64,000 nucleotides of DNA from Mobula hypostoma (lineage: Eukaryota): the NCBI RefSeq assembly GCF_963921235.1, contig NC_086099.1, positions 52,390,001-52,454,000 of the forward strand. The letters run 5' to 3'. Below the pieces are notes generated by a model. That model did not search any database. It was not told the DNA's origin and saw only the letters and a list, made by a program, of their open reading frames with translations. Below, in pieces: positions 52-60,120 of this stretch; the stretch's first letter is position 1; each line of letters opens with the position of its first letter. The translations under genes and the position numbers were made by a program.

Positions 52-1012
52 CCTTACTGCACACAATTCTCTGACACTTCTGCCACCTCCAACGGATCCC
101 ACCACATTTTTCCCTACGTCCCCACCCCCCCAGTTCCTGCTTTCTGCAGGAATCGCTCCCTGCACGACTACCTCGTCCATTCATCCCTAAGCATTAATCT
201 TCCTCCTGGCACTTATCCTTGCAAGCAGACAAGTGCTGCGCCTGCCCCTACACCTCCTCACTCACTACCATTCAGGGCCCTAAACAGTCCTTCCAGGTGA
301 GAAGACATTTCACCTGTGAGTCTGCTGGGGTCATATACTGTGTTCAGTGCTCACAGTGTGGCCTCTTGTATATCGGTGAGACCCAACGTAGATTGGGAGA
401 CCGCTTCATCGAGCACCTACACTCCATCCTCCAGAAAAAGCAGGATCCCCCAGTGGCCAACGTTTTTATTTCCACTTCCCATTCCCATTCCAAAATATCT
501 ATCCATGGCGTTCTCCACTGTCGTAATGAGGCCACACGTAGGTTGGAGGAACAATACCTTGTATTCTGTTTGGGTAGCCTCCAACTTTATAGCATGAATG
601 GTGATTTCTCAAATTTCCAGTAATGACCTCCACCCCCTCTCCTTCACCATTTCTCATCCCCTTTTCCGTCTCTCACCTGATCTTCTTGCCCGCCCACTGC
701 CTCCCTCTGGTACTCCTCCCCCACCCCCGTTCTTTCTTCCATGGCCTCTGTCTCTTCCACCAATCAAGTTCCCAGCTCTTTACTTCATCCCTCCCCTTCA
801 GATTTCATCTATCACCTGGTGTTTATCTCTCCTCTCCCCCTCCCCCACCTTTTTAAATCTACTCCCTAGCTTTGTTCTCCAGTCCTACTGAAGGCTTTTG
901 GCCCGAAACATCGAGTGTACTCTTTCCGTGGATGCTGCCTGGCCTGCTGAGTTCCTCCAGCATTTTGTGTGTGTATTGTTCGGATTTGCAGCATCTACAG
1001 AATTTCTCTCGT
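52..1012 (+). mobile_element. Penelope-like element 3' part (GIY-YIG endonuclease remnant plus 3' terminal repeat with degenerate hammerhead)
   Basis: ORF 219..623 reads VIYCVQCSQCGLLYIGETQRRLGDRFIEH (PLE GIY-YIG). It is followed by a pyrimidine-rich tract and the terminal motif agtcctactgaagg...cccgaaacatcga...gatgctgcctggcctgctgagttcctccagca. Confidence 0.9.
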
Positions 1013-7210: not shown

Positions 7211-7506
7211 TCCATCACTTTGAAAGAACACAACAGAAACTTATTTGTGTATTCCAGTGAAACTGTACTTTAGCAGAAATAGTTCTAACCTCTTATTTCA
7301 GTACTGTGAGGCCTCAAAGCTGCTAATTGTTATTTCCTAACAATTTGCATAAAGAAAGATATCACAGCTGTGCCTGCCTGCTGAAATTGTTAGTTGTAAA
7401 AATAGATAGAATTATAATAGTCAGGTCTTGCAATATAAATTACATTTTGCTTGAAATCTGGAAAATGTAATTAATTAACAATGTCCTCAAACATCTAATA
7501 TAACGT

Positions 7507-7543
7507 AACACTCATCAAAGTTGCTGGTGAACGCCGCGGGCGT
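7507..7543 (-). mobile_element. 37-bp Penelope-terminus insertion with fold-back end
   Basis: catcaaagttgctggtgaacgc is identical to the left arm of the element at 17644. Flanked by a perfect 13-bp TSD tctaatataacgt (7494-7506, 7544-7556). Confidence 0.8.
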
Positions 7544-7587
7544 TCTAATATAACGTTCTATTTTTAATGAATGTCCTGAAAATGTAT

Positions 7588-13666: not shown

Positions 13667-14790
13667 AATAAACTGTTGACATTTTAAGCTGAGAACATAA
13701 CATCAGCACTGGAATGGAAGGGGAAGAAGCCAGAATAAGAAAGTGGGAGAAGGGGAAGGAGTACAAGCTCGAAGGCGATAAGTGAATCCAGGTAGGTGGG
13801 GGAGGGGCTATGAAGTAACAAGCTGGGGGGGTAGTGATAGGTGGAAAAGGTAAAGGGCTGGAGAAGAAAGAATCTGATAAGGGGAGGAGAATGGGACATG
13901 GCAGAAAGGAAAGGTGGAGGGGCACCAGAGGGAGGGGATGACAAGAGAATGGAGTACAGAGAGTGGAATTAAGTAGAGGGAATGGGGAGTGGGATGAATT
14001 ACTGGAAGTTGGAGAAATCGATGTTCATGCCATCAGGTTGCAGGATGCCCAAAAGGAAAGTGAAGTGTTTCTCCTCCAATATGAAAGTGGCCTGATCGTG
14101 GCAGTAGAGGAGGCCATGGATGACATGGCAGAACGAGAATGGGGATTGGAATTAAAATGGTTGGCCACCAGGAGATCCTACTATTTGCAGATAGAGCAAA
14201 GCAATCCCCTAATATACCGAGACCTCACCAATGTAGGGAAGGCTGCGTCGGGATCATCGGATACAGTAGACTATCCCAACAGATTCGCAGTGTTGTCTCA
14301 TCTGAAAGGATTGTTTGGGGCCCTGAATGGGGGTGAGGGAGGAGGTGAATGGGCAGGTGTAGCACTTCTTCCACTTGCAGGAAAATGTGCCAGGAGAGAA
14401 TAAGTGTGGAGAGTTGAATGGACAAGGTAATCACAAAAGGAGTGATCCTTGCTGAAAGTGGAGAGCGGGGGAAGACATGGTCAGTGAGGACAAGGGGAAT
14501 TGTATCCCTATTAAGGCAGCGGAAAGATGGGATGAGTGCTGATATCCAGGAAATAAAGCAGACATGGATAAGGGCAGTATCAATGGTGGAGGAAAGGAAA
14601 CCCCATTGTTTGAAGAAGGTGGACATCTCTGATAGAAAGGAAAGTCTCATCCTGGGAATACATACGGTGGAGACAAAGAAATTCTGAAAAGGGAATGGCA
14701 TTTTTTTAGTAGACAAGGTGGGAAGTGGTATAGTCAAGACAGCCATTCAAGTTGGTAGCTTTACAAAAGGTATAGGTGGACAGTTTGTTT
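13667..14790 (-). mobile_element. Penelope-like element 3' half (inverted copy)
   Basis: Reverse complement aligns with the RT C-terminus, GIY-YIG and 3' tract of the + copies at 19700-20900 and 52183-53203. Confidence 0.85.
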
Positions 14791-15352: not shown

Positions 15353-17640
15353 TCAGTCTCTCTGTATTCTGACATTTTCATCTGTATGCAGATCTGGCAA
15401 CTGTCCTGTATGTCTGTCATAGTAGCTCTTTTGCTTTATTTGTTTGTACTTTTGCTTGTCATGTAGTTGGGCATTACCTCCAGGAGTCAGTAGAGTTGTG
15501 GATGTTGGCAGTTTGGACTTCAGACGACGTCCCATCAACAGCTGCGCAGGAGAGAACCCCACACCCTCAGTCGGTGTGTTGCGGTATTCAAGCAGAGCAA
15601 TGTAAGGGTCACCGTTGCTGCTTTGTGCCTTCTTGAGCATGTTCTTGACAGTTTGTACAGTTCTCTCTGCTTGTCCATTAGACTGAGCGTGCTCTGCACT
15701 GGAAATAACATGTTGAAATTCCCAGCTTTCTGAGAACCCTCTGAACTCACCACTGGTATATTGTGGACCATTGTCACTAACGACAATATCTGGAATACCA
15801 TGTCTTGCGAATGTCGACTTCATCGCAATAATGACACCTCGAATGGACGTATCATTTAACTTGGTGAACTCTGGATATTTTGAATAGTAGTCCACACAAA
15901 GCAGATATTCTTTACCATTGTAGTGAAAGAGATCTGTGCCAATCTTCTCCCATGGTTTTCCTGGTAGTGGATGGGGAAGCAGAGGCTCTCTTGGATTGCT
16001 GTTTTTGTTTTCATTACAGACAGCACACTGAGACATATGTCCTCTATCTGAGTTAACATGCCTGGCCAATAGAGAATGTCCCTTGCTGTTTCTTTACATT
16101 TCACTATCCCCAGGTGTGACTCATGAATTCTGTTAAGCATTTCCTGTCTCATTTGGTTTGGTATGATGAGTTTTGCCTTTTTGTACATTAGTCCTGATGC
16201 ACAGCTGATTTCCTCTTTAAATGTCCAGTATTTCTGCATTTCCTTTGGAACATCTTTTTTCTTTCTGTTGGCCATCCATTCATTGTAATGTCTCTTAGCA
16301 TTTGCATTTCAGGATGATCTGCAGTCGCTTTCTGAACATGTTCAACTTCTCCTCAGAGATGGGTAGCTGAGGTATAACCCAGTTGACCTCCAGCTTTCTT
16401 CCTAGCAACTCTTCCTTTTGGTCTTTGAGGTAAGCACGGCTCAAAGCATCAGCGATGTACAGTTCTTTTCCTGGCTTATAGGTAACTATGAGAGTGTACC
16501 TCTGTAGCCTGAGAAGCATCCTTTGCAGCCTCATAGGAGCTTGGTGGAGTGGCTTTTTGAAGATGCTCTCAAGTGGTTTGTGATCACTCTCAATCTGGAT
16601 TTCTTTGCCATAGACATATTGGTGGAACTTCTCACACCCATAAACTATGGCGAGTAATTCCTTCTCAATTTGAGCATATCGGCTCGTGATCCATACCCCA
16701 CAGGCCTCCCATCCTGCAGTATAACAGCTCCTATTCCCTCCGAACTGGCATCCACAGACATCGTCACCGGTTTATTGACATCATAGAACTTGAGTGCTGG
16801 TGCATTGGTAACCAACTGCTTCAATGTATCAAAACTTTTCTTTTGTTCGTCTTCCCAATGCTATTCAGTGTTGCTCTCTAGTAGCTTTCGGAGTGGAGCG
16901 CTGACCTCTGATAAGTTGGGAATGAATTTGGCAGGATACTGTATCATGCCCATGAACCTCAATAGTTCTTGCTTGTCTTCGGGTGATGGTAGCTGTAACA
17001 CAGCTCTGACCTTTTCATCATCTGGTTTTAGCCCATCAGCACTGAGTACATGACCTATGTATTTGATCTCTGTAGTTCTGACCTTACATTTACTTTTGTT
17101 CAGTTTTAAGTTGTACTCACGTGCTCTCTCCAGGAGCTTCCTCAATCTCTGATCATGTTCCTCAATTGTGTCACCCCATATCAGCAAATCATCAATGATG
17201 TTAACCACCCCATCCAGGCCTTCAATCATTTGTGCCACGGATCTCTGGAATACCTCTAATGTAGAAGAAATCCCAAACGATAGACTCAGGAAATAAAAAG
17301 TATTTCGCATTAGGCACGCGGGAGACAACCTTTTCAACCGTGAGCAGTGGATAGTGCTCTCTTTTGATGGCTTGGTTGAGATCTTGTGGATCCATGCAAA
17401 TCTTCGTCTTTTTTTCTGTGATCACTGTCACCATACTATTCACCCAGTCAGCTGGTTCTATTTGTCTTGTTATTGCTCCCATCTGTTCCATTCTGTGTAG
17501 CTCCTCCACTACGTGATCCCTGTGAGCTACTGGAATCTTTCTCGGGGCATGCACGACTGGTGCAATAGTTGGATCAATCTGGATATGGTGTTTCCCTGGT
17601 AAACATCCAAATCCAGGAAACAAGTCATCAAAGTCTTTGA
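15353..17640 (-). pseudogene. Gypsy pol (RT, RNase H, integrase), frameshifted
   Basis: ORF pieces 17222..17647, 16861..17337, 16295..16534, 15856..16275 and 15353..16069 carry HYPLLT, IIDDLL, ADALSR, HLGIVKCK, VDYYSKYPE, SDNGPQY and SNGQAERTVQ. Confidence 0.9.
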
Positions 17641-17703
17641 GAAACATACATCAAAGTTGCTGGTGAACGCAGCAGGCCAAGCAGCATCTATAGGAAGAGG
17701 CGC

Positions 17704-17739
17704 AGTCGACATTTCAGGCCCAGACCCTTCGTCAGGACT
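17704..17739 (-). ncRNA. Minimal type I hammerhead ribozyme, antisense copy
   Basis: Reverse complement reads AGUC-CUGACGA-AGGGUCUGGGCCU-GAAAU-GUC-GACU. Confidence 0.75.
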
Positions 17740-17744
17740 AAGTT

Positions 17745-17780
17745 AGTCCTGACGAAGGGTCTCGGCCTGAAACGTCGACT
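17745..17780 (+). ncRNA. Minimal type I hammerhead ribozyme (PLE-type)
   Basis: AGUC-CUGACGA-AGGGUCUCGGCCU-GAAAC-GUC-GACU: stem I AGUC/GACU, conserved CUGANGA and GAAA boxes, GUC cleavage triplet, palindromic ACGU at stem III. Confidence 0.85.
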
Positions 17781-17898
17781 GCGCCTCTTCCTATAGATGC
17801 TGCTTGGCCTGCTGCGTTCACCAGCAACTTTGATGTATGTTGCTTGAATTTCCAGCATCTGCAGAATTCCTGTTGTTTGCGTTTAAAGTCTTTGAGAA

Positions 17899-19085
17899 TG
17901 TCATTTTCTTTTTCAACACCATAGATTTGCTTCACCAGGCCTAGCTTTGTGTATGTTGCTTTGCTCAGTATTGCTGGAACATGTTGCTGTACTATTTCAA
18001 ACTCTATCTTGTGTTTTTGTCCTTTGTACACACAGGGGAGTGCTTTTTTGCCCAGTGGCGCCATCTTGTGGTCGAAATATGCAACAAGCTTGCAGGTGGA
18101 TTTTCTCAGTTTTCCTCTGATGTCCAGTGAGTTGAATGTTTCTGCTGACATTACATTGCACTTTGCCCCAGTGTCAAGCTTAAATGTCACATTCCTCCTG
18201 TTTATTATCAGATCTTGGGTCCAATCATCTTCATCCTCCATCTCTGCATTGTCAATATTCTTGATGCATACCTCCTGTCCCACTTCAACTGTGCCAATGA
18301 ACATGTCACTGTTGCCCTCACTCTGTCCCACAGCGTGCATTTTCCTTGCGTGCTCCTTCGATTTGCACATCTTTGCAAAGTGATTTCTTTTCTGGCATAA
18401 CTTGCATGTCTGACCAAAGGCTGGACATTTTCTGTATCCATGTTTATAACCACATCTGTTGCAGTTAACTTCCTTTTGATCATCCTGTGGAGCTGGCTTT
18501 GTCCTGCTCTTGTCAGTTTTCACAGATTTATTTTGTGCACTTCAATCTCTTCATTGAGCACTTTAACCTGACTTGACATTATCTCACTGGCACGGCAAAC
18601 ATCAATTGCCTTTTCTAATGTAAGATCCACCTCTCTCAATAGCCTGCCTCTCACTTGATCACCTCGTATGCCGCATACAATCCTGTCACGTATTACAGAG
18701 TCACACAGTTGACCGAACTCACAGTCTTTTACCTTGCTCTTCAAATCTGTTACACAGGCGTCTATGGTCTCTATTGGTCCTTGAGCCCTTGTGAAAAACC
18801 TGTGTCGGATGTACGGTAGTTTTTTCTCAGTTCGCAGTAATCTCGAAACTTTTTCTTCAACACTTCAATTTTATCTTGCTCATCATCTTGGAAGACAAAC
18901 ATGTTGCAAACCTTTATTGCCTCTTCCCCCGCCACATACAGAAACGTAGCACATTGCACTTTCTCCGTCTTTTCAGCTACGCCGCTAGCAGTGCAAAACA
19001 GCTCAAACTTCTGGATCCATATTTTCCAGTTCTCAGCAAGATTACCTTGTAGGCTTAAACTTGACGCTGGCAGTAACTGTGACAT
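17899..19085 (-). pseudogene. Gypsy gag and protease, frameshifted
   Basis: ORFs 18771..19085 (NLAENWKIWIQKFELF), 18520..18744 (IRDRIVCG) and 17738..18523 (CKLCQKRNHFAKMC; FKLDTGAKCNV). Confidence 0.9.
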
Positions 19086-19274: not shown

Positions 19275-20975
19275 TACATCCTCAACACTTCACATGCTCT
19301 CCATCTCCTCAACAATTTTCACTTCCCTGGCCCTGATCACCTTCTTTTTAGAGAGCAGACCTAACAGTTTCCCTCCAGCATCGCCCTCTTCCATTGGTCC
19401 TCAGCCTCAACATTTTTTTCAGCTTCTCCCACTTTCTCTAAACTCAGGGGGTAGCTATGAGCACCAACATTGGCCTACTTTTCATTGGCTACATGGAACA
19501 GTCCATGTTCCAAGCCTTCCCTGGTAATGCCCCCAATTCTTTCTGCACTACATTGACAACTGCGTTGGCGCTGCTTCATGCACTCATGCTGAGCTTGTCA
19601 ATTTCATCAACTTTGACTCCAACTTCCACCCTGCCCTTAAATTCACTTGGTCCATTTCTGACTCCTCTCTCCACTTTCTCGATCCCTGTCTCCATCTCTA
19701 GAGACAAACTGTTTACCACCATTTTTGATATATCTACCCACTTCCATGGCTATCTTGACTATTCCTCTTCCCACCCGTTCTCCTGTTGAAACGGCATTCC
19801 CTTTATTCAGTTCCTTCATCTCCACTGCATCTGTTCGCAGGGTGAGGCTTTACTTTCCTGGACAACAGAGGTGACCTCCTCCTTCAAAGAATGCTATTTT
19901 CTTTCCTCCACCATTGCTGCCCTCTCCCATATCTCCTTCATTTCTTGAGTATCCATCTTCATGACATCTTCCCACTGCCTTAACAGGGACAGAGTCTCTC
20001 TTGTCATCAACTAGCATCCCATGAGCCTCCGCATCCAGCACATTATTCTCCGCAATTTCTGCCATCTTCAGTGGAACCCTACCACCATACACATCTTTAC
20101 CTCTCCACTCTGTGCTTTCTACATGGATCACTTCCTGTGTGATTCCCTCATCCATTCATCCCTCTCTTCTAATCTCCCTCCTGGCACTTATCACTGCAAG
20201 TGGAAGAAGTGCTACACCTGCCTATTTACCTCCTACCTCACCTCCATTTAGAGCACCAAGCAGTCCTTCCAGATGAGGCCACAGTTCACCTGTGAGACTC
20301 TAGTGTATCCAGTTCTTCCGATGGTGCTTCCTCTACATTGGAGAGATCCAACATAGATTGGGGGACCGTTTTGTTGAGCACCTTCGCTCCATCCACAAAA
20401 GGCAGGATTTCCCAGTGGCCAACCATTTTAATTTCAATCCCCTTTCCCATTGTGACATGTTGGACCATGGTCTCTTCTACTGCCATAATGAGCCTACTCT
20501 CTGGTTAGAGGAGCAATACCTCTTATTCCTTTGGGTTTCTTCCAACTTGACAGCATGAATGTTGACTTCTCCAACTTTCAGTAATTTTCCCCTCCTCCCC
20601 TCCTCTTCAATTCCCCACTCTGCTCCACCACTTACCTCTTCTCCTCCTCATATGCCTATCATCTCCCCCTGGTGCCCTCCTCCTTCCCTTTCTCCCATGG
20701 ACAACTCCCCTCTACTATCAGATTCCTTCTTCTCCAGCCCTTTACCTTTTCCACATATCATCTACCAGCTTCTTTCTTCATAGACCCTCCCCCACCCACC
20801 TTGCTTCACCTATCACTTTTTAATTTGTACTTCTTTACCTCACCTTCTTATTCTGGCTTCTTCTCCCTTCTTTCTGAGTCCTGATGCAGGGTCTCGGCCC
20901 GAAACATTCTCAGTATATGCATTTCCATAAACGTTGCCTGATCTGCTCATTTCCTCCAGCATTTTGTGTCTGTTG
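19275..20975 (+). mobile_element. Penelope-like element (RT, GIY-YIG, hammerhead terminus); begins at ~14791-14866 and is interrupted by Gypsy 2
   Basis: RT-like LFIGYMEQSMF and HGYLDYSSSHP; GIY-YIG GDRFVEHLRSI; terminal agtcctgatgcagggtctcggcccgaaac at ~20877. Confidence 0.85.
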
Positions 20976-28479: not shown

Positions 28480-29404
28480 TAAAGCAACACACACAAAATG
28501 CTGGAGGAACTCTGCAGGTCAGGCAACATCTGTGGAAAAGAGTAAACAGTTGACTTGTCTGACTTGTCGGGCTGAGATTTTTCTTCAAGACTGGCGGGGG
28601 GGGGAATGCCAGAATTAAACAGTAAACAGTGGGTGGGGGGAAAAGAAGCTGGCTGGAAGGCAATAGGTGAAGCCAGGTGGGTGGGAACTTCAAGGGCTAG
28701 AGAAGAAAGAATCAGATAGGAGAGAAAGCGGTCTCTAAGGGAAGAAGGGAACGAGGAGGGGACCCGGGGGGAAGTAATAGGCAAGTGAGAAGAGGCAAAA
28801 GGTCACAGTGGTAAATAGAGGAAGAGGGGTGGAAATGTTGTACACTTGAAAGTGGAATCAATATTCATACCATCAGGTTGGAGGGTACTTCTCCTCCACC
28901 CTGAGGGTGGCCTCATCTTGGCATAAGAGGAGGCCATGTATTAACATATCAGAACAGGAATGGGAATCGGAATTAAAATGTTTGACTACTAGGAAGTCCC
29001 ACTAGTGACAGATGGTACGGAAGTGTTCGACAAAGCAGTCCCCCAATTTATGATGGGTCTCACCAATGTAGAGGAGACTGCATCAGGAGCACCGGACCCA
29101 ATAGACGGCCCTGGCAATTTCGCAGGTGAAGCCTCACGTGGAAGAATCATTCGGGGCCCTGAATGGAGGTGAGTGAGGAGGTGTTTACGCTGCTCACAAG
29201 GATAAGTGCCTGGAGAGGGGTAGGTGGGGAAGAATGAATGGACAAAGGAATCGTGGAAGGAGCATTCCCTGCAAGAAGTAGAGGTGGGAGGGAGGGAGAG
29301 ATGTGTTCCATGCTATGGGCCCTTTGGAGATGGTGGAAGTTGCAGAGAACAAGAGGGATTCTTATCACTATTACAACAGTGGGAAGATGGGCTGAGTGCA
29401 GATC
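28480..29404 (-). mobile_element. Penelope-like 3' half (inverted copy)
   Basis: Starts aaagcaacacacacaaaatgctggagg; reverse of the GIY-YIG region. Confidence 0.85.
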
Positions 29405-33952: not shown

Positions 33953-34140
33953 AAAACACAAAATACTCTGCAGATGCTGGGGTCAAAGCAACACTCACAA
34001 CATGCTGGAGGGACTCAGCAGGTCGGGCAGCATCCGTGGAAACGATCAGCCAACATTTCAGGCTGGAACCCTTCGTCAGGACTGAAGAGGGAAGGGGCAG
34101 AGGCCCTATAAAGAAGGTGGGGGATGGTGGGAAGGAGAGG
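33953..34140 (-). mobile_element. Penelope-like 3' terminus with hammerhead motif
   Basis: Reverse complement of 34049-34083 reads agtcctgacgaagggttccagcctgaaatgttggc. Confidence 0.85.
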
Positions 34141-41304: not shown

Positions 41305-42643
41305 TACGACACATCTGGATAGCAGTAACAGGATTGGTCCGAGTCAGCATGGATTTATGAAGGGGAAATCGTGCTTGACTAATCTTCTGGAATTTTTTGA
41401 GGATGCAACTATGAAAATGGACAAGGGAGAGCCAGTGGATGTAGTGTACCTGGACTTTCAGAAAGCCTTTGATAAAGTCCCATATAGGAGATTAGTGGGC
41501 AAAATTAGGGCACATGGTATTGGGGGCAGAGTACTGACATGGATTGAAAATTGGCTGGCTGACAGAAAACAAAGAATAGCGATTAACGGGTCCCTTTCGG
41601 AATGGCAGGCGGTGACCAGTGGGGTACCGGAGGGTTCAGTGCTGGGACCACAGCTGTTTACAATATATATTAATGATTTAGATGAGGGAATTAAAAGTAA
41701 CATTAGCAAATTTGCCAATGAGACAAAGCTGGGTGGCAGTGTGAAATGTGAGGAGGATGTTATGAGAATGCAGGGTGACTTGGACAGGCTGGGTGAGTGG
41801 GCGGATGAATGGCAGATGCAGTTTAATGTGGATGAATGTGAGGTTATCCACTTTGGTGGTAAGAACGGGAAGGCAGATTATTATCTAAATGGAGTCAAGT
41901 TATGAAAAGGGGAAGCACAACGAGATCTAGGTATTCTTGTACATCAGTCACTGAAAGCAAGCATGCAAGTACAGCAGGCAGTGAAGAAAGTTAATGGCAT
42001 GCTGGCCTTCATAACAAGGGGAATTGAGTATAAGAGCAGAGAGGTCCTTTTGCAGCTGTACAGGGCCCTGGTGAGACCACACCTGGAGTACTGAGTGCAG
42101 TTTTGGTCTCCAAATTTGAGGAAGGACATTCTTGCTATTGAGGGAGTGCAGCGCAGGTTCACAAGGTTAATTCCCGGGATGGTGGGACTGTCATATGTCG
42201 AAAGATTGGAGCAACTGGGCTTGTATACTCTGGAATTTAGAAGGCTGGGACGGGATCTTATTGAAACATATAAGATTATTAAGGGATTGGACACGCTGGA
42301 GGCAGGAAGCATGTTCCCGCTGATGGGTGAGTCCAGAACCAGAGGCCACAGTTTAAGAATTAGGGGTAGGCCATTTAGAGCAGAGTTGAGGAAAAACTTT
42401 TTCACCCAGAGAGTGGTGGATATATGGAATGCTCTGCCCCCGAAGGCTGTGGAGGCCAAGTCTCTGGATGCTTTCGAGAAACAGGTGGATAGAGCTCTTA
42501 AAGATAGCGGAATCAAAGGTTATGGGGATAAGGCGGGAACTGGATACTGATTGTGGATGATCGGCCATGATCACAGTGAATGGTGGTGCTGGCTCGAAGG
42601 GCCGAATAGCCTACTCCTGCATCTATTGTCTATTGTCTATTGT
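41305..42643 (+). mobile_element. CR1 LINE, 5'-truncated, young
   Basis: ORFs 41276..41905 and 42095..42550 (RT and C-terminus); (ctattgt)n tail. It splits an older PLE terminus. Confidence 0.95.
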
Positions 42644-42732
42644 CATAGAGAGTCAACATTTCAGGTCAAGCCTCTTCTTCAGAACTTGTCCAGATAAATA
42701 CAGATGAAGTGTCTTCACCTAAACGGTACCAT

Positions 42733-42954: not shown

Positions 42955-43985
42955 TCCAGAAGGAGGAGCTCAGGAGAACGATGGCATCTAACGATGACTC
43001 CTTCGCTTGCATCTTTGGAAACAGCTCTATTTCTATCCTTAATATACACAGAAAAGTTGCTGGTGAACACAGCAGGCCAGGCAGCATCTCTAGGAAGAGG
43101 TACAGTCGACGTTTCAGGTTGAGACCAACTGACCCGAAACGTCAACTGTACCTCTTCCTAGAGATGTTGCCTGGCCTGGTGCATTCCACCAGCAATTTTT
43201 ATGTGTGTTGCTTGAAATTCCAGCATCTGCAGCTTTCCTTGTGTCTATCTTTAATATCTCCATTTTTCTCTTTCAGGGTTCTTTTGAAGACCCTGGCCTA
43301 GAGTTACACATTGACATCGTTCTTTGCAGGAACCGGACCCACTCTCAGGGTCTCATGACGGCTGCTGTTTGATATGTCAAGGACGCGGCCTAGAAGACTA
43401 GCGTACCTTCAGGTTTCTGGGATTTTGTGGCCAGGAGGTGGGCGAACTGGAGGTCAATGCCGTTGCAGGAAACTGGTGTCTCATGGGAGATGGAAGATTG
43501 AAAGCAGAAAGCTGGCTGCTGGCTGTGTGCCCAGAGACCCGAGTTCTCTGGGTACAGAGCTCGGAAAAAGCGACACAACATCATAAATCACCAAATTGTT
43601 TGTTATGTCTCTCCTCTCGCTGTGAAGTGGAGATACCCCATTTTCCCTTATTAGGGAGAGAGGGAGAGCCTGTGGTATGTTGAAATACTGGATGAATGAG
43701 TAGTCTTTGGAGTACTGCAAGTCTGTGTCTTTACTGATGCTTTGCTGCACGCTTGAGTGCTTGGTGGGGGTGGGTGATGCTTTTTTGCTGGTGGGGGAGG
43801 GGGTTTGTTGCTTTGCTGCTGCTTGTGAGTGGGTGGAGGGAGCTGGGGGGGCTTTGGGGTTCTAACATGTAACTGTCATTCAATCTTTGGGGCACTCCTC
43901 TGTTTTTGTGGACGGTTGCAAAGAAAAAGAATTTCAGAATGTATATTGTATGCATTTCTCTGACATTAAATGTACCCTTGAAACC
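42955..43985 (+). mobile_element. Non-autonomous retroelement (Rex1-like 5' UTR plus tail)
   Basis: Starts ...ggagaacgatggc and ends ctgacattaaatgtacccttgaaacc. Approximate flanking duplication tgtgttcatt(g/a)ag. Confidence 0.55.
43046..43243. mobile_element. Palindromic Penelope-terminus insertion with collapsed hammerhead core
   Basis: Inverted arms (aagttgctggtgaac...gacgtttc / gaaacgtc...ccagcaatt); 14-bp TSD tctatc(c/t)ttaatat at 43032-43045 and 43244-43257. Confidence 0.9.
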
Positions 43986-44632: not shown

Positions 44633-46310
44633 CAATCAGAATCACTGGCATATGTCTGAGATTTGTCGTATTGCAGCAGCAGTACATTGTAATACATGAT
44701 AATGTTTAAACTATAATATACAATTAGAAATATATACAGTATAAAAATAAAATTAATTAGTGCAAAAAGAGAGCAAAAAATAGCGAGGTAGTATTAATGG
44801 GTTTATTGTGCATTCATAAATCTGATGGCAGAGGAGAAGAAGCTGTTCTCCTCGCTGACGATCAACACTGGCGCACCTCAGGGGTGTGTGCTTAGCCCAC
44901 TGCTCTGCTCTCTGTATACACATGACTGTGTGGCTAGGCATAGCTCAAACACCATCTATAAATTTGCCAATGATACAACCGTTGATGGTAGAATCTCAGG
45001 TGGTGATGAGAGGGCGTACAGGAGTGAGATATGCCAACTAGTGGAGTGGTGCCACAGCAACAACCTGGCACTCAATGTCAGTAAGACGAAAGAGCTGATT
45101 GTACACTTCAGGAAGGGTAAGATGAAGGAGCACATACCAATCCTCACAGAGGGATCAGAAGTGGAGAGAGTGAGCAGCTTCAAGTTCCTGAATGTCAGGA
45201 TCTCTGAGGATCTAACCTGGTCCCAACATGTCGATGTAGTTTAAAGAAGGCAAGACAGCGGCTATACTTTATTAGGAGTTTGAAGAGATTTGGCATGTCA
45301 ACAAATACACTCAAAAACTTCTATAGTTATACCATGGAGAGCATTCTGACAGGCTGCATCACTGTCTGGTATGGAGGGGCTACTGCACAGGACCGAAAGA
45401 AGCTGCAGAAGGTTGTAAATCTAGTCAGCACTAGCCTACAAAGTACCCGGGACATCCTTAGAGAGCGGTGTCTCAGAAAGGCAGCATCCATTATTAAGGA
45501 CGTCCAGCACCCAGGGCGTGACCTTTTCTCACTCTTTCCATCAGGTAGGAGGTACAGAAGCCTGAAGGCACACACTCAGCGATTCAGGAACAGCTTCTTC
45601 CCCTCTGCCATCCGATTCCTAAATGGACATTAAATCTTTGGACTACCTCACTTTTTTGTTAATATACAGTACATTTTTAATCTATTCAATATACATAATT
45701 GATTTACTTATTATTATTATTTTTATTTTTTTTCCCTTACTAGATTATGTATTGCATTAAACTGCTGCTGCTAAGTTAACAAATAGCACGTCACATGCCA
45801 GTGATAATAAACCTGATTCTGATTATGTTCCTGAAACACTGAGTGTGTGTCATCACGCTTCAGTACCTCCTCTGTGATTGTAGCAATGAGAAGAGAGCAT
45901 GCCCTGTGAGATGGGGATCCTTAATGATGGATGCTGCCTCCTTGAGGCACCGCCATATGAAGAAGTCCTCGAAGCTGGGGAAGCTTGTCCTCATGATGGA
46001 GCTGGCTGAGTTTACAATTTTCTGCAGCTTTTTCCAATCCTATGCTGTGACCCCTCCATGCCAGATGGTGATGCAAACAGTTAGGATGCTCTCGCAGTAT
46101 ATCTGTAGAAAGTTGCAAGAGTCATTGATGACACTGGAAGTCTCCTCAAACCCTAATACTGCAGTTGTTGTGCTTCCTTCGTAATTACATCAATATACTG
46201 AAACAAGGATAGGTCTTCCGAGATAATGACACCCAGGAACTTGAAACTGCTCACCCTTTCCACTGCTGATCCCTCAATGAGAACTGGTATGTGCTCCCCA
46301 ACTTCCCCTT
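44633..46310 (-). mobile_element. Older Rex1 LINE (44633-44848 and 45826-46310) interrupted by a younger Rex1
   Basis: Reversed aatcagaatc tail; minus ORF AVERVSSFKFLGVIISEDLS. Confidence 0.8.
44849..45823 (+). mobile_element. Rex1/Babar LINE RT 3' part
   Basis: NTGAPQGCVLSPLL...YTHDC, KFANDTTV, ESILTGCITVWYG; tail aataaacctgattctgatt. Confidence 0.93.
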
Positions 46311-52182: not shown

Positions 52183-53203
52183 CACCCCACTAGGAATAGG
52201 GTTCCCCTTGTCCTCACCTACCACGCCACCACCCTCCGGGTCCAACATATTATTCTCCATCACTTCCGCCACCTCCAACAGGATTCCACCACTAAGCACA
52301 TCTTCCCCACCCCCCCACACTTTCTGCTTTCTGCAGGGATCACTCCCTTGTCCATTCGTCCCCCCAATCCCTTCCCACCGATCTCCCTCCCGGCACTTAT
52401 CCTTGAAAGTGGAACAAGTGCTACACCTGCCCTTACACTTCCTCCCTCACTACCATTCAGGGCCCCAGACAGTCCTTCCAGGTGAGGCGACACTTCACCT
52501 GTGAGTCGGCTAGGGTGATATACTGCATCTGGTGCACCCGATGCGGCCTTCTATATATTGGCGAGACCCGACACAGGCTGGGAGACCGTTTCACTGAAGA
52601 CCTATGCTCTGTCCATCAGAGAAAGCAGGATCTCCCAGTGGCCACACATTTTAATTCCACATTCCATTCCCATTCTGACATGTCTATCCACGGCCTCCTC
52701 TACTGTCAAGATGAATCCACACTCTGGTTGGAGGAACAACACCTTATATTCCGTCTGGGTAGCCTCCAACCTGATGGCATGAACATTGACTTATCTAACT
52801 TCCATTAATGCCCCACCTCCCCTTCGTACCCCATCCCTTATTTATTTATTTATTTTCCCCCTTCTTCCCCTTTCTTTTTTCTCCCTCTGTCCCTCTCATT
52901 GCCCATCCTCCGGGTTTCCCCCCTCCCCCTTTCTTTCTCCCAGGCCTCCCATCCCATGATCCTCTTCCTTCTCCAGCCTTGTATCCCTTTTGCCAATCAC
53001 CTGTCCAGCTCTTGGCTCCATCCCTCCCCCTCCTGTCTTCTCCTATCATTTTGGATCTCCCCCTCTCCCTCCCACTTTCAAATCTCTTACTATCTCTTCT
53101 TTCAGTTAGTCCTGACGAAGCGTCTCGGCCCGAAACCGACTGTACCTCTTCCTAGAGGTGTTGCCTGGCCCGCTGCATTCACCAGCAATTTTTGTGTGTG
53201 TTG
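52183..53203 (+). mobile_element. Penelope-like 3' part (GIY-YIG plus hammerhead terminus)
   Basis: ORF 52482..52808 reads VIYCIWCTRCGLLYIGET. Terminal agtcctgacgaagcgtctcggcccgaaaccgact at ~53108-53141, with the cleavage triplet damaged. Confidence 0.92.
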
Positions 53204-53619
53204 CAGTCCTATTTGTATTCATATTTTAATAACATCCTCTCATTGTTACAAAGTAACCCAAGCTCAACAATTCTTTCAAGCATATTTTCTAACCATTACA
53301 AATTACTTACTTCGATAACAAAAGCCTCAAAAGAGCACATCAATTATTATACCATATTTTATATAACGTTTTCCTTTCATGGAGATAAAAATGAATTGTT
53401 CTGCTCTTCTTTGAATATAATTTTCTATTACATGCTAAAACTTGCAAAACTACCCAACAGGCCAGAATCCTCATGGATATTTATCAACTGAAAAGAGAAA
53501 TGTCCACTACATAGCCCTAAATAATCTGTATAGAATAGAGGTCACTTACAAAAAACATTGCAAAGTCAAAGGAAAATTAAGGAGTTGATAAAGGGGAAAG
53601 AAATAATCCGCCTGTGTCT

Positions 53620-57754: not shown

Positions 57755-59006
57755 TTTGGTCCATCAGTTAATCAGGGCAGCCACTTATTTGGGACAACTT
57801 TTAAAGAGCAAAAATGAATCAAGAAAATAGCTGGGATTCCCTTTCTTTATTTGGGACACCATGCCACTTAATAGGGACTGAAGTCTTGCTGTTTTTTGAG
57901 TGAACAGTTTTTAAGTAGTGTCAGTTGAGCCTGCTTGTGTTCAAAAATCAATCACTTTTGTCACTGATAGTGGGCGAGGAATAAACAGTAAGACAACTGT
58001 TTTGCTCACTGCAGTTTCAAGCATTCAGGCTTGGAGATGCCAGAAACAGCCAGGAGTGAAAATAAAACAATTTCACTCCTTCACAAGTTAGAAACTACAA
58101 AGAATTTCAAGGTTTTCAATTCTTTGCAGTTTTCACTTTGAAGGTAACGTATTGAATGTTACAAAGAAAATGAAGATTTGGAGAATGCAATTGTTGACAA
58201 CATTGTATGAAGGCAGACCATTATCTACATTAAATGTTTGTGCTGATTTTGTTCATTCATAGTCTAAAGAACATGAGACAGATGAATAAAAACACAAAAT
58301 ACTCTACAGATGCTGGGGTCAAAGCAATACTCACAACACGCTGGAGGAACTCAGTAGGTCAGGCAGCATCCATGGAAATGATCAGTCAATGTTTCGGGCC
58401 AGAACCCTGCATCAGGACCGAAGAGGGAAGGGGCAGACGCCCTATAAAGAAGGTGAGGGGAGGGTGGGAAGGAGAAGGCTGGTAGGTGCCAGATGGAAAA
58501 CCAGTAAGGGGAAAGATCAAGGGGTGGGGGAGGGGAAGCAGGGAGGGGATAGGTAGGAAAGGTGAAGAAGGAATAGGGGAAAGCACAATAGATAGTAGAA
58601 GGAGGTGGAACCATGTGGGAGGTGATAGGCAGCTGGAGGAGGGGGCAGAGTGAAACTGGGATGGGGGAAGGGAGGGGGAGGGAATTACCGGAAGTTGGAT
58701 AATTCACTGTTCATGCCCAGAGTCTGGAGACTACCCAGACGGTATATGAGGTGTTGCTTCTCCAATTTGAGTTTAGCCTCACAGATGAATTCCTCCATCA
58801 ATAAGTATTAGGAACTAATACACAGTCTTATAGTACTATAGTAGTAGTGGTAATGTTCTAATTTGTTCTGTATTTCATTTAAATATATAATTTGTTACTC
58901 AGTTTGTTTCTTTTATACGTTTTTATCTATTTCCTTGAAACTTCGGCTAATTGGGGCAGCTGTTCAACTGGGCCAAAACGTACTGGCCCCAATGTGTCCC
59001 CATTAA
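57755..59006. mobile_element. Tigger/pogo-like non-autonomous DNA transposon with eroded ends
   Basis: Subterminal motifs gttaatcagggcagccacttatttgggac and gctaattggggcagc...tgtccccattaac; interrupted by a PLE. Confidence 0.55.
58288..58780 (-). mobile_element. Penelope-like 3' end with hammerhead motif, 10-bp TSD
   Basis: TSD acagatgaat at 58278-58287 and 58781-58790; reverse complement ggtcctgatgcagggttctggcccgaaacattgact. Confidence 0.9.
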
Positions 59007-59100: not shown

Positions 59101-59532
59101 CATGATAATACAGAGTTTTTTTGCCCAACCAAATGATAGAAAGTTTCTTATTAAGAATGTTGGGCTCAATCATTTACAACAATTTGAACTAACTTTCAAA
59201 TCTCACAGATTTTTTTAAAAAATCTACAGATGCTGGAAATCTAAAGTAAAACAGAACATGCTATAAACAGCTTAGGTAGCTTGTATAGAGTGAGAAGCAG
59301 AGTTAGATTTCAGGTCCAAGACTCTACAATGGAACTAATCTAGCATGAGTAAAGATAACACATTACAATAAAAACTACTGAAAATATTTAGCAGTGCAGG
59401 ATTTATCTGGGTGAAAGGTCATCAAGCTGTTCTTTCCCGACATATTCTGCCTGACGAATTGGATATTTCCAATATTTTCTATTTCCAGAATCATTGTTTT
59501 TTGTTTTATATTTATGCACTATCAGAAAATTA

Positions 59533-60120
59533 CGAGGGGTGATTGATAAGTTTGTGGCCTAAGGTAGAAGGAGTCAATTTTAGAAAACCTAGCACATTTA
59601 TTTTTCCTACATTTACACACTTAGCCCAGCAGTCGTGGAGCATGCGAATCCCTTCTTTGTAGAAGTCGGCGTCTTGGACCTCCAGGAAGTGGTCCACAGC
59701 AAGGGTGATTGATAAGTTTGTGGCCTAAGATAGAAGGAGATGAGTTATTAACTTCACACTTTCTGCATTTTCACTCAGAGTTGAACTGCACGTGTATGTA
59801 ACGAGAGCTGTATAACTCATCGCCTTCTACCTTAGGCCACAAACTTATCAATCACCCCTGCTGTGGACCACCTGGAGGTCCCAGACGCTCTCGTTACATG
59901 CACGTGCAGTTCAACTCTTTGAGTGATAACGCAGAAAGGTTGAAGTTAATAACTCATCCCCTGCTGTGGACCATTTCTACAAAGAAGGGATCCGTATGCT
60001 CCACAACCGCTGGACTAAGTGTGTACATGTAGAAGGGGACTATGTTGAAAAATAAACGTGCTAGGTTTTCTAAAATTGACTCCTTCTACCTTAGGCTACA
60101 AACTTATCAATCACCCCTCG
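59533..60120. mobile_element. Mariner-type MITE with nested internal TIR copies
   Basis: TA|cgaggggtgattgataagtttgtggcctaaggtagaagg ... ccttctaccttaggctacaaacttatcaatcacccctcg|TA. Confidence 0.92.

What the first reader, a model, noticed from the sequence alone, without database searches (positions are those of the whole stretch)
17630..17898. Miniature palindromic mobile unit encoding a hammerhead ribozyme on both strands
Seen: a 241-bp insertion with a perfect 14-bp TSD (aaagtctttgagaa) sits between the protease and RT of a Gypsy pol. It consists of two ~100-bp inverted arms (2 mismatches, 1-nt centre at 17742) plus a 43-nt one-sided extension. Each arm carries a minimal type I hammerhead (AGUC CUGACGA stemII GAAA[C/U] GUC GACU), placed back to back. 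Known: Penelope-like elements carry such minimal hammerheads in their terminal repeats and often have an inverted upstream copy. Inference: this is either the smallest possible fold-back PLE insertion or a self-contained non-coding, retrozyme/MITE-like family mobilised by PLE RT/GIY-YIG. Transcription from either direction would give a ribozyme sequence and an ~100-bp hairpin that could mask it or feed small-RNA pathways.
Basis: partly seen in the sequence, partly recalled or inferred. Interest (0 to 1): 0.85.

Follow-up and report, generated by a model that had tools for sequence, protein, structure and literature searches.

The report
Mini fold-back Penelope retrotransposon insertion
The 241-base palindrome is real, but it is the dead product of one Penelope-like retrotransposon insertion with the class's known shape (two inverted 3' ends, a one-sided tail, a 14-base target duplication), not a new self-propagating ribozyme element.

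Summary
A 241-bp insertion (17644-17884) sits between exact 14-bp target-site duplications inside a decayed Gypsy pol. Two 98-nt inverted arms differ at 2 positions, and one side carries a 43-44-nt extension. Each strand has an intact minimal hammerhead (HHR) core.

It is the 3' end of a Penelope-like element (PLE) family that fills this window, with about 18-20 arms in 64 kb. Six GIY-YIG endonuclease remnants are present, and five have a recognised HHR 260-300 bp downstream.

The one-sided extension is the published PLE "tail". Family copies end either at about 17838-17844 or about 17877-17884, and the two outer ends of this palindrome fall on those two sites.

A second fold-back at 43046-43244 has the same one-tailed shape but a different fold-back point. 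Contigs from three related organisms show precise empty sites. Only low-depth contigs carry a junction like this one, while arm depth is 10^6-10^7.

So this is a one-off insertion by-product of a published kind (Craig 2021; Frangieh 2024; Cervera & De la Peña 2014), not an amplifying MITE- or retrozyme-like family.

As RNA it folds into a -202 kcal/mol hairpin that buries the ribozyme.

Unchecked first-reader notes of this scan list many similar fold-backs elsewhere in the same genome.

The parts
17630..17643 (.). Left copy of the 14-bp target-site duplication AAAGTCTTTGAGAA
   Evidence: Exact direct repeat. Empty-site contigs keep a single copy (joint 17629->17885, both=14).
17644..17741 (-). 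Left arm: tail-less PLE 3' end in antisense orientation. Its outer end is at the proximal (tail-less) 3'-end site. It carries the minus-strand minimal hammerhead: core 17735-17729, cleavage after 17708.
   Evidence: Its outer end corresponds to the 3' ends of the independent tail-less copies at 7507, 53206, 20976 and 2726.
17742..17742 (.). Single unpaired centre base (G) of the palindrome
17743..17840 (+). Right arm: PLE 3' end in sense orientation, beginning 1 nt before helix I of the hammerhead
   Evidence: 98/98 aligned to the left arm with 2 mismatches.
17744..17781 (+). Plus-strand minimal type I hammerhead: helix I (5 bp), CUGACGA, bulged A, helix II (4 bp, G.U in place of G10.1-C11.1), GAAA, palindromic ACGU in place of helix III, GUC cleavage site after 17776
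   Evidence: The features match the PLE min-HHR description in PMC4209133. No Rfam hit.
17841..17884 (+). PLE tail: a 43-44-nt extension on one arm only, ending at the distal 3'-end site
   Evidence: The same tail is on copies at 881-1015, 33963-34083(-), 58299-58418(-) and 43203-43244. Genome-wide contig ends cluster at 17843-17848 and at 17878-17884. Literature.
17885..17898 (.). Right copy of the 14-bp target-site duplication
43046..43244 (+). Second, older fold-back insertion of the same family. A tail-less antisense arm and a tailed sense arm, folded inside helix II of the hammerhead, with a 13-bp TSD at 43033-43045 and 43245-43257 (12/13).
52482..53206 (+). Longer 5'-truncated copy of the closest subfamily: GIY-YIG endonuclease C-terminus (52482-52805), about 300 bp of 3' UTR, a hammerhead with a 2-nt deletion (53108-), and a tail-less end
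7507..7543 (-). 37-nt simple insertion of the same PLE 3' end, ending at the tail-less site, with an exact 13-bp TSD at 7494-7506 and 7544-7556

Best explanation
The unit is the by-product of one integration event of an endonuclease-bearing Penelope-like element (PLE). It is not an element in its own right.

Two very short copies of the PLE 3' end were laid down at one staggered break (14-bp stagger) with their 3' ends pointing outward.
- The sense copy starts at the distal reverse-transcription start site, so it carries the 43-44-nt tail.
- The inverted copy starts at the proximal site, so it has no tail.
- Both copies stop about 100 nt in, just 5' of the hammerhead, and are joined at one base.

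The hammerheads are passengers. The PLE min-HHR lies 65-100 nt from the tail-less end, so any arm of about 100 nt includes it.

The insertion has no ORF and no known promoter. As RNA it would be a ~98-bp hairpin. It is best read as dead on arrival.

**Shown here:** the insertion boundaries and TSD, family membership of the arms, the two classes of 3' end, a second fold-back with a different junction, and the lack of an amplified shared junction.

**Inferred:** the molecular route.
- About 45%: target-primed reverse transcription on both DNA strands from two template copies, as the purified Anolis Poseidon protein PAc does in vitro.
- About 35%: one cDNA that switches template or snaps back, followed by endonuclease resolution at the tail boundary.
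- The rest: other routes.
For: **1. PLE identity.**
- There are about 18-20 related arms in the window.
- Six GIY-YIG remnants are present. Five have a recognised HHR 260-300 bp downstream, and the sixth (14005-14301, minus strand) has none.
- The Pfam GIY-YIG match has E=5.4e-4 for 297-620 and E=0.022 for 52482-52808.
- ESM Atlas places the ORF with eukaryotic GIY-YIG clusters at score 0.95.
- The cysteines lie between the GIY and YIG motifs, with HxxH downstream, as PMC8557442 describes for PLE endonucleases.

**2. The tail.**
- In-window copies end either at about 17838-17844 or at about 17877-17884.
- Contig ends with unrelated flanks cluster at the same two places.
- The literature describes an optional 30-40 bp tail, often at one end only. 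It corresponds to the stretch between two RT start sites.

**3. A single event.** One exact TSD pair encloses both arms, with no inner TSD. Precise empty sites occur in three organisms' contigs.

**4. No shared junction.**
- Fold-back B folds 15-23 nt further in.
- Other joints lie at 17716->17758, 17717->17754 and 17719->17755, with depth 10-14.
- Contigs across 17742 have depth 12-34, against 10^6-10^7 for the arm.

**5. Two templates.**
- The Anolis PLE protein PAc cleaves and extends both DNA strands.
- Of the 9 differences between B's arms, 4 are the variants that separate the C53-like and A-like subfamilies. This hints at two templates.

**6. Prior report.** Dual min-HHRs on opposite strands, 100-700 bp apart, were already reported for truncated PLEs.
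Against: - No PLE reverse transcriptase of this family lies in the window. All copies are 5'-truncated, so the PLE assignment rests on the endonuclease, the hammerhead, the tail and the architecture.
- Both Pfam GIY-YIG scores are below the curated cut-off.
- The inner ends of the two arms are perfectly symmetrical. Two independent cDNAs do not predict that; snap-back does.
- Both fold-backs here have exactly one tail, and scan notes describe the same for others. In vitro, both start sites are used on both strands, so independent choice would also give two-tailed and tail-less palindromes.
- The junction census rests on short Logan contigs whose depth is only a rough copy-number guide. Most contigs were not listed, so a small family (a few copies) sharing this junction is not excluded.
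- The two-template hint rests on 4 sites, two of them CpG sites prone to parallel mutation.
Confidence: 0.85

Rival explanations
1. A self-contained non-autonomous fold-back family (MITE- or retrozyme-like). A master palindrome would be transcribed and copied as a unit by PLE RT/EN acting in trans.
For: - Unchecked first-reader notes of this scan report recurrent 200-280-bp fold-backs "inverted at the hammerhead" in other windows of this genome.
- A few short contigs in organisms A and B bridge a junction within 1-3 differences of this one (records 9, 10, 17).
Against: - The only other clear fold-back in the window has a different junction, and its arms look like two different subfamilies.
- Other joints fall at other positions, each at single-copy-like depth.
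- A unit copied from a master RNA has no reason to end on its left side exactly at the family's tail-less 3'-end site.
- The recurrence near the hammerhead follows from geometry. The motif lies 65-100 nt from the end, and most insertions are very short.
- Retrozymes need direct tandem hammerheads to be cut out and circularised. Here each strand has one hammerhead plus its own antisense.
- A -202 kcal/mol hairpin is a poor RT template.
Confidence: 0.07
2. The same one-off PLE event, but made from a single cDNA. Reverse transcription starts at the distal (tailed) site and runs about 142 nt. The cDNA 3' end folds back or switches template and copies itself. The endonuclease, which recognises the tail, then resolves the intermediate at the arm/tail boundary.
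For: - The inner ends are perfectly symmetrical, with a 1-nt centre (3-nt loop AGT).
- The arms are 98% identical.
- The tail is always one-sided.
- Craig et al. attribute the tail to EN-mediated resolution.
- Frangieh et al. cite evidence that the tail is needed for EN recognition.
Against: - In fold-back B the tail-less arm reaches about 8 nt further into the hammerhead than the tailed arm. Four of the nine arm differences are subfamily-diagnostic. Copying one arm from the other cannot produce either feature. B is old, though, so a later deletion at the centre and parallel CpG changes are possible.
- The other joints are also asymmetric.
Confidence: 0.3
3. Two independent PLE insertions that landed head to head at the same spot.
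For: The family is extremely abundant, at about one arm per 3.5 kb here.
Against: - A single exact 14-bp TSD encloses the composite, and no TSD flanks either arm alone.
- The empty site lacks both arms together.
- The same composite architecture recurs at 43046-43244.
Confidence: 0.02
4. The unit is functionally retained: an active ribozyme pair or a hairpin source of small RNAs silencing the PLE family.
For: - The catalytic cores are intact on both strands.
- The hairpin is long and nearly perfect.
- Inverted transposon copies are a classic source of small RNAs (general knowledge).
Against: - Each transcript holds only one hammerhead. PLE min-HHRs need a dimer and are barely active even then.
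- The hairpin sequesters the core.
- The single-arm fold is no better than shuffled sequence.
- There is no covariation in 11 in-window copies.
- No RNA run was shown to hold the junction.
- The site lies inside a dead Gypsy copy.
Confidence: 0.05

Closest known systems
Canonical EN+ Penelope-like element insertions (Penelope/Poseidon, Neptune, Nematis clades) as described by Evgen'ev & Arkhipova 2005 and Craig et al. 2021 (PMC8557442)
   Same: Heavy 5' truncation. An inverted 5'-truncated copy abutting the sense copy. A 30-40 bp tail on one end only. Variable-length TSDs (13-14 bp here). A hammerhead in the terminal repeat region. A C-terminal GIY-YIG endonuclease with cysteines between GIY and YIG.
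   Different: It is an extreme miniature. Both copies are only about 100-140 nt, so nothing but the hammerhead-bearing end is present. No RT, pLTR pair or full-length copy of the family lies in the window. The clade was not determined.
PAc (Poseidon of Anolis carolinensis) in vitro insertion reaction, Frangieh et al. 2024 (PMC11167929)
   Same: PAc uses two adjacent internal RT start sites whose spacing equals the genomic tail, and it cleaves and extends both target strands. The two outer ends of this palindrome fall on the family's two 3'-end classes, 35-45 nt apart. The hammerhead lies about 65-100 nt upstream of the start sites, a geometry similar to PAc.
   Different: This is a genomic footprint in a ray, not an assay. 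In vitro both start sites were used on both strands, whereas the fold-backs here always have exactly one tail.
Minimal hammerheads (min-HHR) of metazoan PLEs, Cervera & De la Peña 2014 (PMC4209133)
   Same: Type I topology. Short helix I (5 bp). An extra base between positions 9 and 10.1. No helix III, but a palindromic ACGU that would pair in a dimer. Dual motifs on opposite strands near each other were already noted.
   Different: Helix II is 4 bp, against 7-8 bp in Schistosoma. This copy has G.U where the family consensus has G10.1-C11.1. The two motifs are back to back, with 7 nt (17738-17744) between the outermost helix I bases and 13 nt between the two CUGACGA cores, not 100-700 bp apart.
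Animal non-LTR retrozymes (tandem hammerhead repeats giving circular RNAs; Li, Clavereau & Pollet 2026 bioRxiv 10.64898/2026.07.22.740005)
   Same: Non-coding, hammerhead-bearing, derived from PLE pLTR sequence.
   Different: Retrozymes are direct tandem repeats, so two hammerheads on one transcript can excise a monomer. Here the copies are inverted, and each strand has one ribozyme plus its antisense.
L1 twin priming; MITE and Foldback DNA transposons
   Same: Twin priming also uses the second target strand as a primer and gives an inversion inside one TSD pair. MITEs and Foldback elements are small palindromic units with TSDs.
   Different: Twin priming inverts a more 5' part of the same RNA; it does not duplicate the 3' end. 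MITEs have symmetric ends recognised by a transposase and short TSDs of fixed length. Here the ends are retroelement 3' ends, asymmetric by one tail, with 13-14 bp TSDs.

Membership tests
Penelope-like element (EN+) | GIY-YIG endonuclease with CCHH arrangement (cysteines between GIY and YIG) | tested here: met
   Six remnants are in the window, five with a recognised HHR 260-300 bp downstream. An example is 297-620: VIYCVQCSQCGLLYIGET…EHLH. Pfam GIY-YIG gives E=5.4e-4 and E=0.022, both under the curated cut-off. ESM Atlas gives 0.95 to eukaryotic GIY-YIG clusters.
Penelope-like element (EN+) | PLE/telomerase-like reverse transcriptase upstream of the endonuclease | tested here: inconclusive
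   Every copy in the window is 5'-truncated before the RT. ORFs upstream of the EN remnants gave no Pfam match. The only RT in the area belongs to the Gypsy host.
Penelope-like element (EN+) | Insertion architecture: 5' truncation, adjacent inverted 5'-truncated copy, optional 30-40 bp tail at one end, variable TSD | tested here: met
   Shown at 17630-17898 and at 43033-43257. The two 3'-end classes are seen in the window and in genomic contigs. The definition is from PMC8557442.
Penelope-like element (EN+) | Hammerhead motif in the terminal (pLTR) region | tested here: met
   The motif lies 65-100 nt from the tail-less end in all reasonably preserved copies.
Hammerhead ribozyme (minimal type I, PLE type) | Conserved core CUGANGA … GAAA … UH, with helices I and II | tested here: met
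   Both strands. 3 hits against 0 in 200 shuffles.
Hammerhead ribozyme (minimal type I, PLE type) | Extra base between positions 9 and 10.1, G10.1-C11.1 pair, palindromic 15.2-16.2 | tested here: inconclusive
   The bulged A and the palindromic ACGU are present. The family consensus has G-C at 10.1/11.1, but both arms here have G.U. The left arm has AUGU, a wobble palindrome.
Hammerhead ribozyme (minimal type I, PLE type) | Match to a curated covariance model, or covariation support | tested here: not met
   No Rfam hammerhead match at gathering threshold or at E<=10. There were 0 compensatory changes in 11 in-window copies. I expected this for helix-III-less motifs and decayed copies.
Hammerhead ribozyme (minimal type I, PLE type) | Self-cleavage | not testable with these tools
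   Published PLE min-HHRs show no cleavage as monomers and low cleavage as dimers.
Non-LTR retrozyme | Direct tandem repeats of a hammerhead unit, allowing excision and circularisation | tested here: not met
   The copies are inverted, with one hammerhead per strand. No tandem array of the unit was found by the repeat searches in the window.
MITE / independently amplifying fold-back family | Many copies with the same internal junction and ends but different flanks | tested here: not met
   There is no second copy of this junction in the window. The junctions of other fold-backs differ. Junction contigs have depth 12-34, against an arm depth of 10^6-10^7. The test is limited by the short contigs.

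The most novel reading that the evidence does not exclude
The mini fold-backs are in vivo footprints of a coupled two-strand priming reaction by a PLE dimer. One strand always primes at the distal RT start site and the other at the proximal one, which would explain why exactly one arm has the tail.

The recurrent inner end at the 5' edge of helix I would mark the true 5' end of the template RNA.
- The sequence there, YYAGTCC, fits an initiator-like start.
- It follows a branch-point-like CTTACTAAC, a pyrimidine tract and an AG.
- In Drosophila virilis Penelope the intron end also maps to the 5' end of helix I.

On this reading the roughly 100-nt arms are full run-off copies made from the 5'-proximal pLTR start site of a full-length transcript, not random truncations.
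Probability: 0.15. Interest if true: 0.55.

Novelty: new member of a known kind. Interest (0 to 1): 0.3.

Why it matters
On its own this is one more dead copy of an abundant repeat, and it should be masked as such. Its value is as a very clean natural example. Because both arms are so short, one 269-bp stretch shows every landmark of PLE integration: the stagger (TSD), both alternative 3' ends, the tail and the inversion.

A genome-wide set of such miniatures in this ray could test in vivo what has so far been seen only in vitro with one lizard element. The questions are whether both DNA strands prime, whether two templates are used, and why the tail is one-sided.

It also warns annotators that hammerhead searches in PLE-rich genomes will return many back-to-back motif pairs that are insertion scars, not ribozyme genes.

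Tried and rejected
- **Rfam, whole window at gathering and 17500-18000 at E<=10.** No hammerhead family matched. The only hits were spurious ones caused by the long hairpin (SSRC8_2, mir-2131, UnaL2).
- **Covariation in the hammerhead.** The 11 in-window copies are 81% paired, but with no compensatory change and no better than shuffles.
- **Single-arm RNA folds.** The lowest-energy fold is a rod in which GACG pairs with CGUC. It is not the hammerhead, and it is no better than shuffled sequence.
- **Search for the family's RT.** Pfam scans of ORFs upstream of the EN remnants found nothing.
- **PDB sequence search with the EN.** No match.
- **RNA-run search for the junction.** Only 4 sampled words were available, and no run on record as RNA holds the junction. 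This is uninformative about expression.
- **Raw reads of organism E (X21).** Nothing was laid, so there was no test.
- **A 5'-end hot-spot at 17745/17746.** The loose ends suggested one. Most of those ends are pyrimidine-rich and match the upstream 3' UTRs of other subfamilies. A smaller heterogeneous set remains. I therefore keep the hot-spot idea only as the novel case.
- **Possible third fold-back at 61213-61301.** Too decayed to score.
- **Inverted structure at 45127-46297.** It reads like a head-to-head pair of LINE-type 3' coding regions with no match to the PLE profile or tail motif. It is unrelated.
- **Pyatkov 2004 (PMC522041).** Not held in the paper library, so it is cited only through Frangieh 2024.
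- **Paper search on Penelope in Chondrichthyes.** It added nothing specific to PLEs in rays.
Full report
**1. What is there**

- AAAGTCTTTGAGAA occurs at 17630-17643 and again at 17885-17898.
- Between the two copies lie 241 bases: an antisense arm (17644-17741), one centre base (17742), a sense arm (17743-17840) and a further 43-44 bases (17841-17884).
- The arms differ at only two mirrored positions, 17721/17763 and 17711/17773. The second is a CpG-to-TpG change on the sense strand.

Each strand reads as a minimal type I hammerhead. On the + strand:
- helix I is UAGUC (17744-17748) with GACUG (17777-17781);
- the core CUGACGA is at 17749-17755, followed by a bulged A;
- helix II is GGGU/GCCU around loop CUCG;
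- GAAA follows, then the palindrome ACGU where helix III would be, and GUC with the scissile bond after 17776.

A strict pattern for this motif hits three times in the 64 kb, all in this repeat family, and never in 200 shuffled windows.

Rfam does not recognise it at any threshold tried. I expected this for motifs that lack helix III, but the call therefore rests on the motif and the literature, not on a model score.

**2. It is an insertion**

The host is a decayed Gypsy-type pol on the minus strand, with the protease upstream and the RT and integrase downstream of the site. The two flanking ORF fragments share a frame, and 241+14 = 255 is a multiple of three.

Logan contigs of three related organisms contain the empty site. 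They run from 17629 straight to 17885 with a single copy of the 14 bases. One example is a 449-nt contig about 5% diverged from the flanks, presumably from paralogous Gypsy copies.

**3. What the arms are**

BLAST and a profile search find about 18-20 related arms in the window.

Six GIY-YIG endonuclease remnants lie in the window, at 297-620, 14005-14301(-), 20304-20581, 28857-29130(-), 52482-52805 and 58694-58780(-). Five of them have a recognised hammerhead 260-300 bp downstream. The one at 14005-14301 has none.
- Pfam GIY-YIG gives E=5.4e-4 and E=0.022, both under the curated cut-off.
- ESM Atlas places the ORF with eukaryotic GIY-YIG clusters at 0.95.
- The sequence shows VIY-C-xx-C-xx-C-…-YIGET…HxxH. 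This is the cysteines-between-GIY-and-YIG arrangement that Craig et al. give as the mark of PLE endonucleases.

The arms are therefore the 3' end of an EN+ Penelope-like element family. No RT of the family is in the window, because every copy is 5'-truncated.

An earlier scan note says the genome is a devil ray. I did not check that.

**4. The one-sided extension is the PLE tail**

Aligned copies end in one of two places.
- **Tail-less,** at positions equivalent to 17838-17844: left arm A, left arm B, and the copies ending at 53206, 7507, 20976 and 2726.
- **Tailed,** 35-45 nt further on at 17877-17884: right arm A, right arm B, and the copies at 881-1015, 33963-34083 and 58299-58418.

Genomic contigs that leave the family sequence into unrelated flanks do so at 17843-17848 and at 17878, 17879 and 17884.

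[quoted passage not shown] Frangieh et al. show that the tail equals the stretch between two adjacent internal RT start sites of the Anolis element PAc. They also show that the protein cleaves and extends both target strands.

The 241-bp unit fits this exactly. It has 3' ends outward, one outer end on each start-site class, and one TSD pair around the whole.

**5. Family or one-off**

They do not.
- The second fold-back in the window (43046-43244, 13-bp TSD, 12/13) has the same shape, with a tail-less antisense arm and a tailed sense arm. It folds inside helix II, and its arms end 8 nt apart.
- In contigs of organism A, antisense-to-sense joints occur at 17716->17758, 17717->17754 and 17719->17755, each at depth 10-14.
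- The only contigs crossing 17742 are 52-54 nt long and differ at 1-3 positions. Their depth is about 34 in organism A and 12 in organism B, against a summed arm depth of 10^6-10^7.
- Most genomic copies that reach 17741 continue into the family's 3' UTR (consensus …CTCTTACTAACTCTTCCTTC, as in copy 52482-53206) and do not fold back.

The census is limited by short contigs, so a handful of copies sharing this junction cannot be excluded. A large family can.

Unchecked notes of this scan list fold-backs from about 220 bp to 5 kb elsewhere in the genome. That also argues for a mechanism, not a master copy. The many examples "inverted at the hammerhead" follow from geometry. The motif lies 65-100 nt from the end, and most insertions are very short. 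The window even has a 37-nt one with a perfect 13-bp TSD (7507-7543).

**6. Mechanism**

Two routes fit.

*(i) Both nicked target strands prime reverse transcription on separate template copies, one at each start site, and the two short cDNAs are joined.*
- In favour: the in vitro behaviour of PAc.
- In favour: the unequal inner ends of fold-back B and of the other joints.
- In favour: 4 of the 9 differences between B's arms are exactly the variants that separate the two closest subfamilies. Two of those four are CpG sites.

*(ii) One cDNA from the distal site snaps back or switches template, and the endonuclease resolves the intermediate at the tail boundary.*
- In favour: the perfect symmetry and 98% identity of the arms at 17742.
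- In favour: the tail is one-sided in both fold-backs of this window, and unchecked scan notes describe the same elsewhere in the genome. Free choice between two start sites on both strands would not predict that.

I put these at roughly 45% and 35%.

**7. Function**

As RNA, either strand folds into a 98-bp hairpin (-202.5 kcal/mol, z = -27) that pairs each catalytic core with its antisense.

A single arm folds no better than shuffled sequence, and not into the hammerhead. Each transcript has only one ribozyme. Published PLE min-HHRs are inactive as monomers and weak as dimers. Nothing shows transcription of this locus.

The hairpin could in principle feed small-RNA pathways, but that is untested.

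**8. Verdict**

The architecture, the tail, the minimal hammerhead and even paired motifs on opposite strands are all published (PMC8557442, PMC11167929, PMC4209133). This is a new instance of a known kind in a genome where it is very common. It is of modest interest as an unusually compact record of PLE integration.

Noticed in passing
window 7494-7556: A 37-nt insertion consisting only of the last bases of the PLE 3' end (minus strand, 7507-7543). It ends at the tail-less site and is flanked by an exact 13-bp TSD (ACGTTATATTAGA in element orientation). It is the shortest PLE insertion in the window.
   Followed up: yes
window 43033-43257: A second, older fold-back PLE insertion (199 bp, 13-bp TSD with one mismatch). 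Its two arms look like different subfamilies: the tailed arm shares 4 variants with copy 53108-53206, and the tail-less arm shares them with the 17644-17884 type.
   Followed up: yes
window 53058-53112, and the genome-wide contig consensus before 17741: Directly upstream of helix I the family has a branch-point-like CTTACTA[A/T]C, a pyrimidine tract and AG. This looks like a 3' splice site. YYAGTCC also fits an initiator-like start. In Drosophila virilis Penelope the intron end maps to the 5' end of helix I (PMC4209133). Three old copies (2824, 42686, 50332) also begin exactly at AGTCC/AGTTC.
   Followed up: partly
window 297-620, 14005-14301(-), 20304-20581, 28857-29130(-), 52482-52805, 58694-58780(-): Six decayed GIY-YIG endonuclease C-termini of Penelope-like elements, all 5'-truncated before the RT. 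The one at 14005-14301 has no recognisable hammerhead downstream.
   Followed up: partly
window 61213-61301: A possible third PLE fold-back, very decayed. An antisense arm reaching the hammerhead abuts a sense arm that starts about 33 nt further in. It is too degraded to score.
   Followed up: partly
window 45127-46297: A roughly 1.2-kb inverted structure with arms about 72-79% complementary. It reads like a head-to-head pair of LINE-type 3' coding regions, with no match to the PLE profile or tail motif.
   Followed up: no
window 59531-60122: A nest of near-perfect inverted repeats (95-100% complementary, arms 32-76 nt) containing GGGTGATTGATAAGTTTGTGGCCTAAG. It is young, palindromic and unidentified.
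   Followed up: no
window 42600-42650: A GACAATA microsatellite (GACAATAGACAATAGACAATAG) interrupts an old PLE end right after its hammerhead.
   Followed up: no
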